Positions 6,160 to 35,826 of a stretch of DNA of 64,000 nucleotides are shown in pieces. Location: positions 62,001 to 126,000 of the IMG/VR virus record IMGVR_UViG_3300031521_001337. One strand, given 5' to 3'. The position numbers and the translations under genes were made by a program. The notes below the pieces were generated by a model. That model was not told the origin of the DNA. It saw nothing but the letters and a program-made list of their open reading frames with translations, and ran no database searches. Position 1 is the first letter of the stretch. Every line of letters begins with the position of its first letter.

Positions 6160-6566
<407 letters not shown>

Positions 6567-20861: not shown

Positions 20862-20950
20862 GGGGGTGTGGCGAAATTGGTAGCCGCAGCTAAATATAGG
20901 TTAGACCATAGCGGTCGTGAGACATGGGGGTTCGAAGCCCTCCGCCCCCA
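20862..20950 (+). ncRNA. tRNA-Leu-like RNA with a distorted, 7-nt-expanded anticodon arm
   Basis: Leu-type acceptor, D, variable and T arms; anticodon region GCTA-AATATAGGTTAGACCA-TAGC. Confidence 0.7.
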
Positions 20951-20956
20951 CTAAAT

Positions 20957-21035
20957 TCCCCAATGGCGTAATTGGCAGACGCGTATTCTTCGGAATATGT
21001 CGAGAGACATGTGGGTTCGAGTCCTCCTTGGGGGA
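20957..21035 (+). ncRNA. class II tRNA-like RNA with a UUCG tetraloop in place of the anticodon loop
   Basis: TATTC-TTCG-GAATA; D-arm GCG..CGC; variable arm GTC-GAGA-GAC; acceptor TCCCCAA/TTGGGGG. Confidence 0.7.
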
Positions 21036-21041
21036 GCAAAT

Positions 21042-22061: not shown

Positions 22062-23006
22062 ATGAAGATATTATTTATTGGTAATGGAATTTTTGGAGTT
22101 CCAGCATTAAAAAAATTACATGAAATTTATCAAGTTACAGTTATAACAACACCACCACGACGTTTCGGTAGAGTAGTACAAAATACACCTATTTATATTG
22201 CTGGTAAAGCTTTAGGTTGTTTAGTATATACTGCTAATGATATTAATGAACTTGAACATCGTATAATTAGTACTGATTTTGATTTAATTGTTGTTGCATC
22301 TTATGGACAAATAATTAAAATGAAAATACTTGATTCTGCTAAATATGGTGCAATTAATATTCATGGTTCATTATTACCGAAGTATAGAGGTGCTTCTTGT
22401 ATTCAAGCTGCTATTTTGAATAGAGATTCTGAAACAGGAGTTACATTTATTAAAATGAATGCTGCTGTAGATGCTGGAAGTATTATTACTCAACGTAAAA
22501 TGTATCTACCTGTAGGAATGGGATATATTATGCTTCTTGATCAATTATCAAACTTAGCTGCTGAAAATATTCTTCTAACAATCACTAAATATACTCGTGG
22601 AGTTATTTTAAGACCACAGATAGAAAGTGAAGCTACATATTGTTGTAAAATAACTAAAGATGATTGTTTACTTGATTTTAATAAAAATGTTGATGATGTA
22701 TATGCAAAAATGAAGGCATATGAATCGAATCACGGAGTATTCTTTTATTTACCAGATAACAATACTGAAGTTAAAATTAAAGATGCATGTATGTATACTG
22801 GACGTGTTAAAGGTGATTTCTTAGATGGAGAATTAATTTGTGTTGAAAATAATAAACTTTTTATAAATTGTAATAAAAGTAGTCTTCAGATTGTTTCATT
22901 ACAATTACCTAATAAAAAGGTTATGTCAGCTAGAGATTTTATTAATGGTCATAAGAAGTTAATCACACAATTTGCTGATTTACAAATAATTGTACATAAT
23001 GTATGA
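22062..23006 (+). CDS. fmt: methionyl-tRNA formyltransferase
   Basis: KILFIG...FG..AL..L, TTP.RR.GR, VASYG.I, INIHGSLLPKYRGA..IQ, ETGVT, VDAG.I; ~314 aa. Confidence 0.92.
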   Translation: MKILFIGNGIFGVPALKKLHEIYQVTVITTPPRRFGRVVQNTPIYIAGKALGCLVYTANDINELEHRIISTDFDLIVVASYGQIIKMKILDSAKYGAINIHGSLLPKYRGASCIQAAILNRDSETGVTFIKMNAAVDAGSIITQRKMYLPVGMGYIMLLDQLSNLAAENILLTITKYTRGVILRPQIESEATYCCKITKDDCLLDFNKNVDDVYAKMKAYESNHGVFFYLPDNNTEVKIKDACMYTGRVKGDFLDGELICVENNKLFINCNKSSLQIVSLQLPNKKVMSARDFINGHKKLITQFADLQIIVHNV

Positions 23007-23011
23007 AAAAT

Positions 23012-23095
23012 GGGATGTTATACCGTAGCTTATAGCGGGCCTGACTGTAACTTAGGTGTCTTCGGACTCGGGTGGTTTGACTCCACCACATCCCA
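23012..23095 (+). tRNA. tRNA-Tyr(GTA)
   Basis: CCTGA-CTGTAAC-TTAGG; variable arm GTC-TTCG-GAC. Confidence 0.88.
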
Positions 23096-23171
23096 CTAAA
23101 GTATTAGTCTTTAGACAATAAGCAAGATAAAAATAAGGAGTGGCACTTGCGTTCACCAATAATACTTTTCA

Positions 23172-23244
23172 CACGATGTAGCTCAGTTGGTAGAGTAGTC
23201 CTTTCATGCAGGACGGGTCAGGAGTTCAAATCTCTTCATCGTGA
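23172..23244 (+). tRNA. tRNA(CAT), elongator Met or lysidine Ile2
   Basis: GTCCT-TTCATGC-AGGAC; C1:G72 paired; unusual G37. Confidence 0.85.
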
Positions 23245-23262
23245 CAAACTAAACAAAATAAA

Positions 23263-23629
23263 ATGGATAAATTATTATTAGTACTTTCAATTCTTACATT
23301 ACCTGGAACATTGTTACTTATTACAGGTTTAGCAGATCTTTCTACTGTTAAAGAAGAGAAGGATAAAATAACGTATAATATTGCAGTATTTCTTAGATTT
23401 ACATCAATATTAACATTAGCATTAGCTATATTTGGAATTATTGCTTACATTTTAAATTAAAATTATGACTCTGTATAAAAAACTAAAGTGGACGTTCTTT
23501 GCAACACCACGACATGCAACTGAATGGGCTGAACAAAATGAAATGAGAATAACAGCTGCATTAGGAGTTGTTTTTGTAACATTTTTAATATTATTATTAT
23601 TTGGTCAACTTCCAACATGGGCTGGATAA
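23263..23629 (+). CDS. two small membrane proteins (23263..23460, 23465..23629)
   Basis: Hydrophobic ORFs; the second (54 aa) is below the ORF track cutoff. Confidence 0.55.
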
Positions 23630-30770: not shown

Positions 30771-32206
30771 TTTAAATTTTGATGAAACAGGTTGGCCTAT
30801 TTCAAATATTCCAGAATATACTGAAGAAGATAGACTTATTGAAGAAGCTGCATTTAAAAAATGTTGTGGTTCTTGTGAAAATTTTATAAATTATCATGGT
30901 GAAGCTGGATTTTGTAAGAATTCAAAACTTAAACCATGTGACCCGAAAGCTATGATTGATATGTTTAAACCTAAATGTAGAAAATGGAAAAACAATTTGT
31001 AACATATGAGATTGCTAAGCAATTAAAAAGATTAGGATTTGATGAAGAATGTTTAGGAATTTATTGTCCAGAACTTGATATTCATAATGTAGGAGTGAAT
31101 TGGAATACTAATAATATTAATGATATTAAAAAAGAATGGTATTCAGCACCTCTTTGGCAACAAGTAATTGATTGGTTAATTGAAAAACTTTTATTAAATG
31201 ATGATTATTTTGAATTAGAATTAAGATATTTTTCAGATTATTCTGGAGGAATTTATTTAAAGGATAAAGAAATAATTGATTTTGATAATAAGGAAATGTT
31301 AATCGAATCATTAATTCAATTATTAAACAAATAGAATTATGTCAGAAAGAAAAATAAATTTACAAAACATATTATCCGAAAAATTAGGTGATGAAAAATT
31401 ATCTATTAATGAAGTTGTAATTGAAGCAATGAAAGAAGTATGTAAACAACTCCTTGAATTAGCTGCTGAAAATGCTTATATAGAACGATATGAAACCGGT
31501 TTTGGTGGTTCACATTATAATGAATGTAAATCTAAAACATTTGAAGTTGGACAAGAAGAATTTGTATCAATTGACAAACAATCAATTTTAGACACAATTA
31601 ATCAAGTAGAATAATGCCACCTTGTAGAGTAAGATCGTGTCATTGTGAACAATGTCGATATTCAAAAAATAAACATAGTAAACGTAGACTTAAAAAAGTT
31701 ATAAAACGATTACTAAATAAGAGAAGAAGAAATCCGCAATTTGACGGAACAGTGTTTAACCATTATTGGGCTTAATATGAAAACACCAGAAGAATTAGAA
31801 GAACATTATATGAATTCTAATAAAGGTAAAGGAAATTATTTACCATTTACAGACTTTATAAAACAAATTCAAGATGATGCATATTTACAAGGTCTTAAAG
31901 ATGCTGAAATGGGATTTAGATTTATGAGTGACATGAGTACTAAAACTCAAGGATTTCATAATTTACAAGAACGAATTAAAAAATTAGAAGATGATAAATC
32001 CGGAGAAGTATGTTTTGACGAAAATAGTGAAATCGACTAAAGATTACACTTATAATGATTATGTAAAAGCAATTGAAGAAATTCAAAAAGATGCATATAA
32101 TCAAGCAATTGAAGATGCTGTTAATGATGCTGAATGTTATGATCCTCCTCATGAAGATAAACAATATGCACTTGATAGACAATCAATTTTAAAATTAAAG
32201 AAATGA
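30763..32206 (+). CDS. run of hypothetical proteins (30763..31002 Cys-rich, 30984..31334, 31339..31614, 31777..32040, 31991..32206)
   Basis: ORF track; some share IQ.DAY and QSIL motifs. Confidence 0.55.
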
Positions 32207-32940
32207 AATTAAAAGTAATGGCGATGAGTGATTTGCATGGTAATTTACCAGAAGTCATAGAATCCGCAAACATAGCAATAATTGCAGGAGATATATCACC
32301 ATTAGAAATTCAATTTAATAAACCTGCTATGAAAGTATGGTTAGAAACTGAATTTGCAGGATGGGTGAAATCTTTACCTGTTGATAGAGTATTTTTGGTT
32401 GCTGGTAACCATGATGCTTATTTTGAAAGTGCCAGTAGAGCTAATATATTAGCATTCACTCAAGCATGTGGTAAACTCACATACTTAAAAAATGAAACCA
32501 CTCATTATTATGATGATTGGGGTCAATTATGGTCTATATTTGGAACACCTTATTGTCATATATTTGGTACTTGGCCATTTATGAGAACAGAAGAATTTAT
32601 GACCGATAAATTTAAAGAAATACCTGATAAAGTTGATATTATTATAACACATGATCCAGCATTTGGAGTAGGTGATACTGATGTTATTTTAGAAGGTCCT
32701 ATACATCGTTCACAACGAATGTTTCAACACTTAGGTAATGAACCGTTAAGAGCACGAATAACTGATGTAGAATATAAATTATTAATTTGTGGACACATTC
32801 ACGGTGGTGATCATATTTATAATGAAGGATGGAAAGCAGTAAATGTAAGTCATTTAAATGAATTTTACAAACCTGTTTATACGCCATTTTATATTGAATT
32901 AGAACACGATAGTGTAACAGAACCAGAAACCGAAGCCTAA
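32203..32940 (+). CDS. calcineurin-like metallophosphoesterase
   Basis: SDLHG, AGD, AGNHD, ITHDP, CGHIH. Confidence 0.9.
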   Translation: MKLKVMAMSDLHGNLPEVIESANIAIIAGDISPLEIQFNKPAMKVWLETEFAGWVKSLPVDRVFLVAGNHDAYFESASRANILAFTQACGKLTYLKNETTHYYDDWGQLWSIFGTPYCHIFGTWPFMRTEEFMTDKFKEIPDKVDIIITHDPAFGVGDTDVILEGPIHRSQRMFQHLGNEPLRARITDVEYKLLICGHIHGGDHIYNEGWKAVNVSHLNEFYKPVYTPFYIELEHDSVTEPETEA

Positions 32941-33532: not shown

Positions 33533-34219
33533 ATGATTTGGTTTACAAGCGATACACATGCGTATCATAAGAATATAACAAAAGGTGTCTCTACTTGGGA
33601 CGATAAAGACATTAGTTGTCGTGATTTTCCAACACTTGAAGAAATGACGGATGCCGTAGTTAACTCAATTAACAAATATGTTATGGAGGATGATGAATTG
33701 TATCACGATGGTGATGTAAGTTTTGGAGGAATTGAAAACATTTGGAATTTTCGTAAGAGAATCAAATGTAAAAATTTTCATTTAATTCTCGGAAATCACG
33801 ATGACCATATCAAGAAAAATAAAATTCTTCCTAATTGTCATTGGGTTACTAAAGTTGTAAAAATAGATGGGTGTGATACTATACAAAATGATTATATTGA
33901 AGATGCAACTTTTATAGATCCACTTAATCCTGTTAGAGCTCAAGATTTATTTACTTCTGTAGATAAATATCTTGAATTAAAAATTGAAAAGAAAACTATA
34001 ATCTTATCCCACTATGCTTTTGAAGAATGGTATGAGATGGATCTTACAGGATCATATCATTTACATGGTCACAATCATCATAGATTTGATGATAAAGAAT
34101 TAAATACTAAATATCGTAGAATGGATATTGGTATAGATTGGGAAGAATTTCGTCCATATTCTTGGGATGAAATCAAAGAGATAATGAAAAATAGAAAAAT
34201 TAAAAAACACAATTCATAA
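33533..34219 (+). CDS. calcineurin-like metallophosphoesterase
   Basis: WFTSDTH..H, HDGD, LGNHD, LSHY, HLHGH.H. Confidence 0.9.
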   Translation: MIWFTSDTHAYHKNITKGVSTWDDKDISCRDFPTLEEMTDAVVNSINKYVMEDDELYHDGDVSFGGIENIWNFRKRIKCKNFHLILGNHDDHIKKNKILPNCHWVTKVVKIDGCDTIQNDYIEDATFIDPLNPVRAQDLFTSVDKYLELKIEKKTIILSHYAFEEWYEMDLTGSYHLHGHNHHRFDDKELNTKYRRMDIGIDWEEFRPYSWDEIKEIMKNRKIKKHNS

Positions 34220-34220
34220 A

Positions 34221-34310
34221 ATGAAAAACTTTAAACTAAACATAGAAAATCCAAATACTGATACCGATATTGATCCAAATCCAGTACCTCCAATAACTCC
34301 TGTTAATTAA
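34221..34310 (+). CDS. 29-aa Pro-rich peptide MKNFKLNIENPNTDTDIDPNPVPPITPVN
   Basis: ATG 2 nt after the previous stop; its TAA overlaps the next ATG (TAATG). Confidence 0.55.
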   Translation: MKNFKLNIENPNTDTDIDPNPVPPITPVN

Positions 34311-34684
34311 TGGATAATAAATTTAAGTTTTGTATTAATTTAGTAAGATGTATTCCAATTCTTTCAACATTTTGTATAATAATTTCACTCATTTTTGCAT
34401 TATTTGAAATTAATATAGTAAAAATATTTTATCCATTTTCAAGTTCTATCATTACGGGAATTTTATTATATTCTCTTTCAAAGATATTTAAATTTTGTTT
34501 ATGGCATAGAGTATTAATAATTAACTTATTATTGGTTGCAAGTTTTACTTGGATTAATACTTTATTTAAATTAACATCAAATTTAATGACAATACGGATG
34601 ATGTTACTAATTACTAGTTTATCATCTATATTAGCATTAATAATTTTTATAAAAAATGGGAGTATTAGAAAAACTTCTTGTTGA
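34310..34684 (+). CDS. four-TM membrane protein
   Basis: Hydrophobic throughout; S..FKFC.WHR motif. Confidence 0.75.
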   Translation: MDNKFKFCINLVRCIPILSTFCIIISLIFALFEINIVKIFYPFSSSIITGILLYSLSKIFKFCLWHRVLIINLLLVASFTWINTLFKLTSNLMTIRMMLLITSLSSILALIIFIKNGSIRKTSC

Positions 34685-34958
34685 AGCATTAACCATGTGT
34701 AGAAGTGGTAATTGTGATAACATAACACCACAAGAATTGGAAATGTTATCTGAAATGATTCATAAACCTGAAACTGTTGGACGAGAAGATGCAGCAAAAT
34801 TTTTAGGAGTGTCACTAACTAAATTTCATGAATTAAAAGATTCTGGAGTAATTAAAGAACCAAGAAAGCGAAAAGGTTTTAAAGAAAAAGAATACTATTT
34901 ATCAGATTTACGTAAGTCATTGGAAATCATCAAGTTAAATGATGAAAAAATTCATTAA
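34656..34958 (+). CDS. HTH DNA-binding protein (excisionase/MerR-like)
   Basis: GREDAAKFLGVSLTKFHELKDSG.I..P. Confidence 0.75.
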   Translation: MGVLEKLLVEALTMCRSGNCDNITPQELEMLSEMIHKPETVGREDAAKFLGVSLTKFHELKDSGVIKEPRKRKGFKEKEYYLSDLRKSLEIIKLNDEKIH

Positions 34959-34978: not shown

Positions 34979-34986
34979 TATTTTTG
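34979..34986 (+). promoter_or_regulatory. putative Bacteroidota -7 promoter element
   Basis: TATTTTTG ~55 nt upstream of the Gly-rich gene; -33 element not clear. Confidence 0.4.
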
Positions 34987-35040
34987 TATTGAAGTTCTAG
35001 CTAGATTTCAGTTTTACAAACAATTTAATATTTTTTTATT

Positions 35041-35826
35041 ATGGCACTTACATTAGATGGCACAACTCCGATGCCTAATTTCGGAGGAGGATCTGGCGCA
35101 GGTTTAGGCGTTGGAGGTGGAGTTCTTGGTGGACTTTTAGCTGGTGGTCTTGGTGGAGCATTAGCAGGTGGTTTATTCGGCAATCGTGGTGGTTGGGGTG
35201 GTAATGGATACGGAGCAGCTCCTGCAGCAACAGCTGTAGCAACTGACGTTGTTCTTAATCCTGCTTTTCAATCATTACAAACACAAATTACTAATTTAGG
35301 ATCTCAAGTTGCTTCTGGTGACTTAAATAGTATCTTGAATAGTGAATTTCGTAGAGTTAACAGCGCTATAGATAATAGTTCTGCTGACATTTTAAATTCG
35401 GTAGCTAATCTTTCTACAGCACAAGCTACATCAGCATTTACTACTTTGCAAGGAATTAACGATTTAGGTCGTGATATTACTGCACAAAGTAATCAAGGTC
35501 AGTTACAACAATTAAATTCATTTAATAATTTAACAACTACAACATTACAAGGTTTTAATGGAGCAGCAATGCAAAATCAAAACGCTACAAATCAAATTAT
35601 ATCACAAGGTACAGCTAATGCAATGGCAATGGCTCAATGCTGTTGTGAAATAAAATCAGCAATTGCTGCTGATGGTGGAGCAACTCGTGCATTAATTAAT
35701 GATTTGAATGTTCAAAGTTTACGTGATCAACTTGCTACTGCAAACGGTAAAGTAAGTAATAACGAACAAAATCAATATCTATTAAGTACGATTTTAGCTC
35801 ACTTTACTCCTACTGCTGTTGTTTAA
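35041..35826 (+). CDS. Gly-zipper / Gln-Asn-rich coiled-coil protein with CCC motif
   Basis: GGVLGGLLAGGLGGALAGGLFG, NRGGWGG, AQCCCEIK...TRALI. Confidence 0.85.
   Translation: MALTLDGTTPMPNFGGGSGAGLGVGGGVLGGLLAGGLGGALAGGLFGNRGGWGGNGYGAAPAATAVATDVVLNPAFQSLQTQITNLGSQVASGDLNSILNSEFRRVNSAIDNSSADILNSVANLSTAQATSAFTTLQGINDLGRDITAQSNQGQLQQLNSFNNLTTTTLQGFNGAAMQNQNATNQIISQGTANAMAMAQCCCEIKSAIAADGGATRALINDLNVQSLRDQLATANGKVSNNEQNQYLLSTILAHFTPTAVV

What the first reader, a model, noticed from the sequence alone, without database searches (positions are those of the whole stretch)
34221..34958. Peptide - four-TM protein - HTH regulator, translationally coupled
An unannotated 29-aa Pro-rich peptide overlaps (TAATG) a membrane protein with a FKFC.WHR motif, which overlaps an HTH protein, directly upstream of a separately promoted Gly-rich gene. 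Peptide plus membrane processor or sensor plus DNA-binding regulator is the layout of peptide communication systems, so this could be a phage signalling or decision module in a Bacteroidota phage (inference).
Basis: partly seen in the sequence, partly recalled or inferred. Interest (0 to 1): 0.6.

Follow-up and report, generated by a model that had tools for sequence, protein, structure and literature searches.

The report
Phage membrane-tethered DNA-binding module with micro-protein
The peptide, membrane-protein and HTH genes are a real three-gene unit conserved in hundreds of Bacteroidota-type phages (including crAss-like gut phages), but it looks like a cytoplasm-facing, lysis-associated membrane complex with a tethered DNA-binding protein, not a secreted-peptide communication system.

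Summary
All ORFs and overlaps exist as described. The trio is a conserved, virus-only module. The 4-TM protein (FxFCxWH[RK] loop) has 196 loci in IMG/VR and 495 cluster representatives. A partner gene almost always overlaps its 3' end, and a 16-55-aa micro-ORF abuts its start in 16/21 lineages versus 16/137 control genes. The micro-ORF is under purifying selection. The partner is an N-terminal helical hairpin (GxCDN[IL]T) plus a MerR/excisionase-type winged HTH. Natural TM-HTH fusions (cr3_1, L082), micro-tail-TM fusions (P0067, P0160) and N-in/C-in topology place all three parts on the cytoplasmic side. The micro-protein has no signal sequence, and the module is almost absent from bacterial genomes (3 short MAG contigs). 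In at least five lineages the TM gene sits in lysis cassettes beside five unrelated lysin types, often with a hairpin-only partner. Best reading: a new holin-like membrane protein with a detachable cytoplasmic tail and a tethered DNA-binding partner. In this phage the partner may act on a palindrome at the next gene's promoter. The communication reading is not supported, and the 'small terminase' annotation in Crassvirales is doubtful. Function remains inferred.

The parts
34221..34310 (+). Micro-ORF (29 aa), hydrophilic with a Pro-rich C-terminal motif. Its stop overlaps the TM start (TAATG).
   Evidence: Relatives keep a D-P-P-x-P-I-P-P-I-I-P tail abutting the TM start. pN/pS is 0.08-0.33 in better-sampled subfamilies. 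A micro-ORF abuts the TM start in 16/21 lineages versus 16/137 control genes. No signal-like segment.
34310..34684 (+). 4-TM membrane protein of a new virus-only family. It is N-in/C-in, with a conserved cytoplasmic loop S..F[KR]FCxWH[RK] and a charged C-tail. Holin-like by context in relatives.
   Evidence: AF2 model. Positive-inside counts. Invariant P16, S57, F62, C63, W65, H66, G117. 196 IMG/VR loci and 495 representatives. No Pfam, PHROG or PADLOC hit. No fold match. Lysis-cassette context in relatives.
34656..34958 (+). Partner protein: N-terminal helical hairpin (res 2-36, motif GNCDNIT), a MerR/excisionase-type winged HTH (res ~40-81) and a C-terminal helix. It overlaps the TM gene by 29 nt.
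   Evidence: AF2. Foldseek matches to RdfS, GlnR, MtaN, BldC and Xis. Alignments A1 and A4. The overlap of 20-59 nt is conserved across lineages. Natural TM-HTH fusions. Hairpin-only homologues next to TM.
34979..34986 (+). TATTTTTG, matching the Bacteroidota -7 promoter consensus TAnnTTTG, conserved in relatives upstream of the Gly-rich gene.
   Evidence: Intergenic alignment of 15 relatives and genome scan.
34996..35005 (.). Perfect 10-bp palindrome TCTAGCTAGA just downstream of the -7 box. It is a candidate operator for the wHTH (inferred).
   Evidence: Unique in the 213-kb genome. Relatives have lineage-specific palindromes or inverted repeats at the same place. cr3_1 and cr271_1 show a -7 box plus palindrome ahead of the gene that follows the HTH.
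35014..35021 (+). TTACAAAC, a conserved element between the palindrome and the start codon.
   Evidence: conserved in most window-clade relatives. Role unknown.
35041..35826 (+). Gly-rich protein (261 aa): N-terminal glycine-zipper-like hydrophobic segment, Q/N-rich helical region and a CCCEIK motif. It is the conserved downstream neighbour of the HTH gene in this clade.
   Evidence: phrog_8119 (unknown function), E=1e-10. Follows the HTH gene in window-clade relatives with or without TM. Phage-only hypothetical clusters. Homology to the crAss Gly-rich neighbours is not established.

Best explanation
The three ORFs encode one translationally coupled, virus-specific membrane module whose parts all face the cytoplasm. 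(1) The 124-aa protein is a four-helix, N-in/C-in inner-membrane protein of a new family. In other phages it belongs to the lysis cassette, so it is most likely holin-like, or at least lysis-associated. (2) The 100-aa protein is its cytoplasmic partner. The N-terminal helical hairpin (GxCDN[IL]T) is the part that goes with the membrane protein, and the C-terminal half is a MerR/excisionase-type winged HTH that binds DNA. (3) The 29-aa micro-protein is a detachable cytoplasmic N-terminal tail of the membrane protein, made in step with it by termination-reinitiation at the overlapping stop and start. Inferred mechanism in this phage: the wHTH acts on the palindrome that overlaps the start region of the promoter of the next gene (the Gly-rich membrane protein). 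The share of wHTH free to do so depends on how much is held at the membrane by the TM protein. This would be a membrane-titration switch linking accumulation or state of the holin-like protein to expression of the neighbouring membrane protein. Shown: conservation, coupling, folds, topology, fusions and lysis-cassette context in relatives. Inferred: physical binding, DNA target, holin activity and direction of regulation.
For: Conservation and coupling: the TM family has 196 IMG/VR loci, and the HTH homologue overlaps the TM 3' end by 20-59 nt in nearly all of 56 distinct proteins. The trio also occurs in Crassvirales cr106_1, cr3_1 and cr271_1 (hhalign 96.5% and 95.3%) and in 9 annotated crAss-type phages. 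Physical link: a natural TM-wHTH fusion in cr3_1 (233 aa) and an indel fusion in L082. Hairpin-only partners (59 aa) overlap the TM gene in L078 and L138 (hhalign 96.7%). Every HTH with a TM in the genome keeps the hairpin Cys. The complete genome G002, whose HTH has Phe there, has no TM, while G001, G003 and G004 (Cys) have TM elsewhere. Topology: K+R per sequence is 2.6, 3.0 and 3.7 on the N-tail, loop 2 and C-tail versus 0.2-0.3 on loops 1 and 3. Micro-protein: positional census 16/21 versus 16/137, pN/pS 0.08-0.33, frame-preserving indels, and in-frame fusion to TM in P0067 (PPPRTGGG motif) and P0160. Lysis context: L138 GH24 endolysin (phrog_7, 3e-38). L078 spanin-like protein plus endolysin (phrog_315, 2e-41). 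L134 endolysin (phrog_181, 1e-58). cr106_1 lysis cassette with L,D-carboxypeptidase. L140 Peptidase_M15_3 plus a u-spanin-like lipoprotein. Fold: wHTH matches MerR/Xis structures. Operator candidate: -7 box plus palindrome in the window clade and in cr3_1 and cr271_1.
Against: In the window's own genome the module is not next to a lysin. The two detectable lysins lie about 84 kb and 92 kb away in the TGA-recoded late blocks, whereas the module lies in the standard-code block with replication genes. The complex prediction gave no verdict, which is not evidence either way. No experimental or RNA data exist. The TM fold matches no known holin or any named family. TM+micro-ORF occurs without HTH (L039, L046, L054) and HTH without TM (G002), so the parts can work alone. 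Palindromes near promoters are common and could be RNA 5' hairpins in some lineages. Micro-protein sequence classes differ strongly between lineages (net charge -2 to +13), so a single biochemical role is uncertain.
Confidence: 0.45

Rival explanations
1. Secreted-peptide communication (arbitrium-like) module. The 29-aa peptide is exported or processed by the membrane protein, accumulates outside, and controls the HTH regulator to set a phage decision.
For: Gene order peptide, membrane protein, HTH. The peptide is conserved with a variable N-terminus and a conserved C-terminal motif, which superficially resembles pro-peptides whose C-terminus is the mature signal.
Against: Short forms have no signal or hydrophobic segment. 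The micro-protein is fused as a cytoplasmic N-tail of TM in P0067 and P0160. The HTH protein has no peptide-binding domain. The motif is conserved rather than diversified between distant phages. The module is almost absent from bacterial genomes or prophages and occurs in Crassvirales, which are regarded as non-lysogenic (PMC10136315). It has lysis-cassette context.
Confidence: 0.04
2. The 100-aa protein is the small terminase subunit (TerS), as annotated in several Crassvirales records. The membrane protein and micro-ORF are unrelated neighbours.
For: Depositors' annotation 'Excisionase, terminase small subunit' in cr106_1, cr112_1, cr116_1, cr111_1 and IAS virus. A weak phrog_57 hit at E=0.05. 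TerS N-terminal domains share this wHTH fold (Foldseek rows 6hn7 and 7lw0).
Against: In cr106_1 the gene lies about 14 kb downstream of TerL and portal, at the lysis end of the late operon, while two other small ORFs sit directly upstream of TerL. At 94-131 aa it is too small for the usual TerS oligomerisation and TerL-binding domains, and the HTH is C-terminal to a hairpin. It is fused to a 4-TM protein in cr3_1. Hairpin-only versions lack the HTH altogether. In the window it sits among standard-code early/middle genes.
Confidence: 0.07
3. Membrane anchoring of DNA without a lysis role. The TM protein tethers the wHTH so that phage DNA is organised at the membrane (replication or packaging site, as with phi29 p16.7), or incoming foreign DNA is blocked (superinfection exclusion).
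For: A cytoplasmic wHTH is tethered or fused to a membrane protein. In the window the module lies in the block with replication genes. The wing is basic (RKRKGFKEK). Many micro-proteins are very basic (+8 to +13).
Against: Repeated association with lysis cassettes and hairpin-only partners that cannot bind DNA. TM+micro-ORF exists without any HTH. No direct evidence for either role.
Confidence: 0.15
4. The micro-ORF is mainly a regulatory leader, not a functional protein. Its Pro-rich end (DPP, PPI; EF-P-dependent motifs by established knowledge) slows ribosomes just before the overlapping TM start and throttles coupled translation of the membrane protein. This is compatible with the main model for the other two genes.
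For: The conserved part is the C-terminal approximately 11 residues next to the stop, and the N-terminus varies in short forms. The stop overlaps or abuts the TM start in 16/21 lineages. In csAssE-type phages a G+C-rich hairpin lies between the micro-ORF and TM.
Against: Other subfamilies have no poly-Pro (KPRTGGG-type or basic types). Long forms conserve an N-terminal amphipathic segment with pN/pS 0.23-0.6. In-frame fusions to TM indicate the peptide works as part of the protein.
Confidence: 0.2

Closest known systems
Holin/antiholin pairs of phage lysis cassettes (lambda S105/S107, T4 T with RI/RIII, P1 LydA/LydB)
   Same: A small membrane protein with TM helices and a charged cytoplasmic C-tail. 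It is encoded beside non-homologous endolysins and spanin-like genes in several lineages. A small cytoplasm-facing partner gene is tightly coupled to it.
   Different: No sequence or fold similarity to any known holin family. The partner often carries a DNA-binding winged HTH. There is a separate conserved micro-ORF. In the window's phage it is not next to a lysin. Hole formation is untested.
Membrane sequestration of transcription factors (Mlc held by PtsG) and membrane-bound one-component regulators (ToxR, CadC)
   Same: A DNA-binding domain held at, or fused to, an inner-membrane protein on the cytoplasmic side. A candidate operator lies at an adjacent promoter.
   Different: MerR/Xis-type wHTH rather than ROK or OmpR types. 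There is no periplasmic sensor domain (loops are 4-10 residues). It is phage-encoded, and the signal is unknown.
Arbitrium (AimP/AimR/AimX) and other phage or Gram-positive peptide signalling systems
   Same: A small ORF next to an HTH protein. The conserved C-terminal part of the peptide.
   Different: No signal peptide, no TPR receptor, not in temperate phages or prophages, the peptide is cytoplasmic (fused to the TM N-tail in relatives), and a membrane protein sits between them.
HTH_17 / MerR-excisionase winged helix proteins, including TerS N-terminal domains (lambda gpNu1 type)
   Same: The fold of residues ~40-81 plus the following helix, and the basic wing.
   Different: Below Pfam threshold by sequence. 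It has an extra N-terminal hairpin domain tied to a membrane protein. It is not adjacent to an integrase or TerL.
phi29 p16.7, a membrane-anchored DNA-binding protein
   Same: A phage protein that links DNA binding to the membrane.
   Different: p16.7 has one TM helix with a different DNA-binding fold in a single chain, and no micro-ORF or lysis context.

Membership tests
Arbitrium-like peptide communication | Pro-peptide with an N-terminal secretion signal | tested here: not met
   Maximum 11-residue Kyte-Doolittle score is -0.23 for the window peptide and below 1 for all short forms.
Arbitrium-like peptide communication | Receptor with a peptide-binding (TPR-like) domain plus HTH | tested here: not met
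   The 100-aa protein is a two-helix hairpin plus wHTH plus one helix. No TPR family hit.
Arbitrium-like peptide communication | Carried by temperate phages or prophages | tested here: not met
   3 hits on short MAG contigs in about 185,000 species genomes versus 196 viral loci. Present in Crassvirales.
Arbitrium-like peptide communication | Extracellular accumulation of the mature peptide | not testable with these tools
   Needs peptidomics of lysates or supernatants.
Holin | Small protein (<~150 aa) with at least one TM helix and a hydrophilic charged C-terminus | tested here: met
   124 aa with four helices. The C-tail has 3.7 K+R and 1.7 D+E per sequence.
Holin | Gene adjacent to endolysin or spanin genes | tested here: inconclusive
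   Met in relatives: L138, L078, L134, cr106_1 and L140. Not met in the window's genome, where the lysins are at G000 180.7 kb and 4.5 kb and the module is at 96.2 kb.
Holin | Membrane permeabilisation at a programmed time, triggerable by energy poisons | not testable with these tools
   Needs expression or complementation assays.
HTH_17 / MerR-excisionase winged HTH | Sequence match above the Pfam gathering score | tested here: not met
   PF12728 scores 12.7 bits against a cut-off of 27. Two relatives carry a precomputed PF12728 hit.
HTH_17 / MerR-excisionase winged HTH | Three-dimensional fold | tested here: met
   Foldseek probability 0.89-0.99, rmsd 2.5-3 A over about 58 residues to RdfS, GlnR, MtaN, HiNmlR and BldC. 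E-values are only 0.07-0.6.
Small terminase (TerS) | Gene next to TerL, with an oligomerisation and TerL-binding region | tested here: not met
   About 14 kb from TerL in cr106_1. The protein is 94-131 aa. It is fused to a membrane protein in cr3_1. TerL in the window's genome was not located.
Ribosome-arrest or leader peptide | Conserved C-terminal arrest motif adjacent to the regulated start, with sequence otherwise free | tested here: inconclusive
   Fits the short poly-Pro forms. Does not fit the GGG or basic forms, or the long forms with a conserved N-terminus.

The most novel reading that the evidence does not exclude
The module is a DNA-gated lysis clock. A new holin family of Bacteroidota phages, including crAss-like phages (for which the review read here names spanins and lysins but no holin), is held in check by a partner whose winged HTH binds cytoplasmic phage DNA or a specific operator. 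Hole formation, or expression of the next lysis-related membrane protein, is released only when that DNA is packaged or the partner is titrated. The co-translated Pro/Gly-rich micro-protein sets the dose or acts as a third, antiholin-like subunit.
Probability: 0.12. Interest if true: 0.85.

Novelty: new variant of a known kind. Interest (0 to 1): 0.55.

Why it matters
If correct, this defines a large family that I found undescribed in Pfam, PHROGs, PADLOC, the PDB and the papers searched. It has 495 representative clusters and spans peat jumbo phages to human-gut Crassvirales. It would supply a candidate for the holin that the Crassvirales review read here does not name. It corrects a probable mis-annotation ('small terminase'). 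It gives a clear example of a conserved, selected phage micro-protein that gene callers mostly miss. A DNA-binding domain wired to a lysis-cassette membrane protein would be an unusual way to time lysis or late gene expression. The proteins are small enough for direct tests.

Tried and rejected
- **Complex prediction.** TM plus HTH with my own alignments gave no answer (score 0.00). This is not evidence for or against binding.
- **Fold searches of the TM model.** PDB and ESM Atlas returned only generic helical bundles.
- **Family scans.** PADLOC gave nothing. Pfam and PHROGs gave nothing for TM or the micro-ORF. The feature search in the Atlas returned only phage hypothetical clusters.
- **Sequence search of solved structures.** Only designed helical hairpins matched, for the N-domain.
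- **DNA-level search.** No match for the region in phage records.
- **Reads.** 24 peat DNA runs and no RNA run. Laid contigs show the module is invariant (0 differences over 33785-34886), so there is no population test and no transcript ends.
- **TerL hunt.** PF03237 and two PHROG batches on large ORFs found nothing. The likely reason is that the late block is TGA-recoded.
- **Lysin hunt.** PF05838, PF01510, phrog_181 and phrog_315 found nothing in the own genome.
- **Gly-rich homology.** Homology between the window's Gly-rich protein and the crAss neighbours is not supported. Only short motif resemblances remain.
- **Regulon idea.** TTAGCTAA occurs 20 times, but all copies are inside coding sequence (Leu-Ala-Lys/Asn), so I rejected it.
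- **Zn or disulfide clasp.** I considered a clasp between TM C63/H66/C118 and the hairpin Cys. C118 is variable, and cr106_1 and cr3_1 lack the hairpin Cys, so it is not supported as a general feature.
- **Programmed frameshift fusing TM and HTH.** HTH is in the +1 frame of TM in the overlapping lineages I computed by hand. I saw no shift-prone site by eye in the window's overlap and ran no systematic scan. Read-through of the TM gene's TGA adds only 6 residues. Not supported.
- **Micro-ORF/TM frame relation.** It is not constant across lineages, so no recoding link.
- I repeated it reading all sequences by coordinates.

Full report
**Observation.**
- A 29-aa ORF lies at 34221-34310. Its TAA stop overlaps the ATG of the next gene (TAATG).
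- A 124-aa ORF lies at 34310-34684, with FKFCLWHR at residues 60-67.
- A 100-aa ORF lies at 34656-34958 and overlaps the previous one by 29 nt.
- An 82-nt spacer follows, then the Gly-rich gene at 35041-35826.

The window is bases 62001-126000 of a 213-kb, 29.6% G+C virus record found in peat metagenomes. The module lies in a plus-strand block with NAMPT and two phosphoesterases upstream, and DNA polymerase, helicases, primase and ligase downstream.

**The proteins.** No Pfam, PHROG or PADLOC family matches the micro-ORF or the membrane protein. The third protein has only sub-threshold HTH_17, excisionase and TerS hits.

With an alignment of 22 relatives, AlphaFold2 models the membrane protein as four helices: 3-31, 37-59, 64-86 and 91-117 (pLDDT 79.8). 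Across the family, basic residues sit on the N-tail, loop 2 and the C-tail (2.6, 3.0 and 3.7 per sequence) and hardly at all on loops 1 and 3 (0.2-0.3). The protein is therefore N-in/C-in, and the invariant S..F[KR]FCxWH[RK] loop faces the cytoplasm.

The third protein (pLDDT 88.6) is a two-helix hairpin, then a winged HTH, then a long helix. Foldseek matches the HTH part to MerR/excisionase-type domains (RdfS, GlnR, MtaN, HiNmlR, BldC, Xis) with probability up to 0.99 but E-values of only 0.07-0.6.

**Conservation of the pair.**
- The HTH protein has 28 word-search relatives.
- The membrane protein has 196 loci in IMG/VR and 495 representative clusters in the exhaustive profile search.
- In nearly all of 56 distinct membrane proteins examined, an HTH homologue starts 20-59 nt inside the 3' end of the membrane gene.
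- The pair also occurs in phage csAssE-Sib.
- It occurs in Crassvirales of two families. These are cr106_1 (hhalign 96.5% for TM and 95.3% for HTH), cr3_1, cr271_1 and six further records.
- In cr3_1 the two are one 233-aa protein. In one member of the csAssE population an indel fuses them (L082).
- In L078 and L138 the overlapping partner is only the 59-aa hairpin domain, without the HTH (hhalign 96.7%).

Every HTH protein from a genome with the membrane gene keeps a Cys in the hairpin motif GxC. Three phages whose HTH gene lacks an adjacent membrane gene, but keeps the Cys, carry the membrane gene elsewhere. The one complete genome whose HTH has Phe at that position has no membrane gene. Together these points indicate that the hairpin is the membrane-protein-associated domain and that the HTH works at the inner face of the membrane. 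A complex prediction gave no verdict.

**The micro-ORF.** It is real.
- An independent ATG-started ORF of 14-60 aa ends at the membrane gene's start in 16 of 21 lineages, against 16 of 137 other genes in the same loci. Within 70 nt the figures are 19/21 against 32/137.
- Close relatives of the window share the tail D-P-P-x-P-I-P-P-I-I-P behind a variable N-terminus.
- Longer forms (48-55 aa) also conserve an N-terminal amphipathic segment.
- Other lineages have K-P-[RK]-T-G-G-G-type or very basic forms, including the Crassvirales ones.
- pN/pS is 0.08-0.33 where divergence is not saturated, and indels keep the frame.
- The window's own subgroup is saturated (pN/pS 0.45-0.96), so for it the evidence is motif conservation.
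- Short forms have no hydrophobic segment.
- In P0067 the PPPRTGGG-type peptide, and in P0160 a basic peptide, are fused in frame to the N-terminus of the membrane protein.

Because that N-terminus is cytoplasmic, the micro-protein is best read as a detachable cytoplasmic tail or subunit. It would be made with the membrane protein through the overlapping stop and start. A leader-peptide role (Pro-dependent throttling) remains possible for the poly-Pro forms.

**Context.** In at least five divergent lineages the membrane gene lies in a lysis cassette, each time beside a different lysin type.

| Lineage | Gene order or neighbour |
|---|---|
| L138 (G001) | micro-tail, TM, hairpin-only, protein with N-terminal TM helix plus coiled coil, GH24 endolysin (phrog_7, 3e-38) |
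| L078 | same order, with a phrog_315 endolysin (2e-41) |
| L134 | phrog_181 endolysin (1e-58) |
| cr106_1 | trio directly before the annotated lysis genes and an L,D-carboxypeptidase, at the far end of the late operon, about 14 kb from TerL |
| L140 | Peptidase_M15_3, a lipoprotein with a C-terminal TM helix (u-spanin architecture), KilA-N, TM, HTH |

A review states that Crassvirales late structural and lysis genes form one unit and names spanins and lysins but no holin (PMC10136315). Small size, TM helices, a charged C-tail and adjacency to unrelated lysins are the usual genomic criteria for a holin, so I rate the family as holin-like.

In the window's own genome this criterion is not met. 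The only lysins I could find are at about 180.7 kb and 4.5 kb, both in the late blocks.

**The next gene.** In the window clade the HTH gene is always followed by the Gly-rich gene, whether or not the membrane gene is present. The spacer has three conserved features.
- A TAnnTTTG box at 34979-34986.
- A lineage-specific palindrome directly downstream. In the window this is TCTAGCTAGA at 34996-35005, unique in the genome.
- TTACAAAC at 35014-35021.

cr3_1 and cr271_1 show a -7 box with an adjacent or overlapping palindrome before the Gly-rich gene that follows their HTH. This makes the palindrome a reasonable candidate operator, but that is inference. Homology of the Gly-rich proteins between the window and Crassvirales is not established.

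**Rival readings.**
- *Communication model.* It fails four of its defining features (see the membership table). The module is also nearly absent from bacterial genomes.
- *Small terminase label.* It rests on the shared HTH fold. Position, size, the fusion to a membrane protein and the hairpin-only forms all speak against it.
- *DNA anchoring or superinfection exclusion without a lysis role.* This cannot be excluded.

**Verdict.** Its central idea, peptide signalling or a decision module, is not supported.

The best-supported reading is a new, widespread phage module. It consists of a holin-like four-helix membrane protein, a co-translated cytoplasmic micro-protein, and a hairpin-plus-winged-HTH partner held at the membrane. 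In this phage the partner probably acts on the neighbouring promoter. All functional steps are inferred and need the experiments listed.

Noticed in passing
outside the window: G000:C1:1-31000 and 130000-213486 (loci L123-L130); tRNA at L124:10014-10087 (-): The minus-strand late blocks look TGA-recoded. Reading TGA through raises coverage by ORFs of >=100 aa from 0.56 to 0.86 and from 0.66 to 0.89 (in the larger block, 130-213 kb, median ORF 188 to 332 aa, longest 2984 aa), while the plus block with the module is unchanged. Two lysins carry two in-frame TGA each. The genome encodes a tRNA with anticodon TCA. Which residue TGA encodes was not determined.
   Followed up: partly
window 6160-26810: A tmRNA gene (6160-6566) and 24 tRNA genes lie in a loose array. 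They include a tRNA-Tyr called with anticodon ATA (20862-20951) and one with an unreadable anticodon (20956-21037).
   Followed up: no
outside the window: G000:C1:4856-8111 and 210162-213417: The two ends of the record carry the same ORFs (344 and 739 aa; tail-fibre-like, phrog_5668). The record is therefore probably a circularly overlapping assembly of about 205 kb, matching a 205,452-bp metagenome contig.
   Followed up: partly
outside the window: G000:C1:203813-205534 (-): A large serine recombinase or integrase (573 aa; phrog_95, 1.6e-69) sits in a phage whose TM/HTH module family is otherwise not found in prophages. The genome also encodes a GroEL-like chaperonin (22081-23529) and a ribonucleotide reductase.
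   Followed up: no
L047:3382-4527; L008:4503-5267, L009:4291-4806 and L039:3500-3982: Mobile genes have landed in or next to the module. An IS605/TnpB-like ORF sits between TM and HTH in L047. HNH/AP2-type endonuclease ORFs sit right after the HTH or TM gene in L008, L009 and L039.
   Followed up: no
L077:3001-3417 and L051:3001-3420: In the csAssE-like gut population some contigs have an in-frame stop codon (TAG, by my reading of the upstream sequence printed) inside the membrane gene, at positions that are Leu or Trp in relatives. This could be a nonsense variant, a sequencing error or recoding.
   Followed up: no
L133:1057-1983; proteins P0084, P0085 and about 7 more: The membrane protein occurs as tandem paralogues (L133), and as single proteins of about 260-290 aa with two copies of the domain.
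   Followed up: no
window 32203-32940 and 33533-34219: Two calcineurin-like metallophosphoesterase genes lie just upstream. The second ends 1 nt before the micro-ORF start, and its stop overlaps the micro-ORF start in L099, so the micro-ORF may be coupled to it as well.
   Followed up: no
L001:3910-3940 (csAssE-Sib) and the same place in about 40 gut contigs: A G+C-rich hairpin (GGGGAAGGTG-N5-CACCTTCCCC) followed by a T-run lies between the micro-ORF and the membrane gene. It looks like a terminator or attenuator.
   Followed up: no
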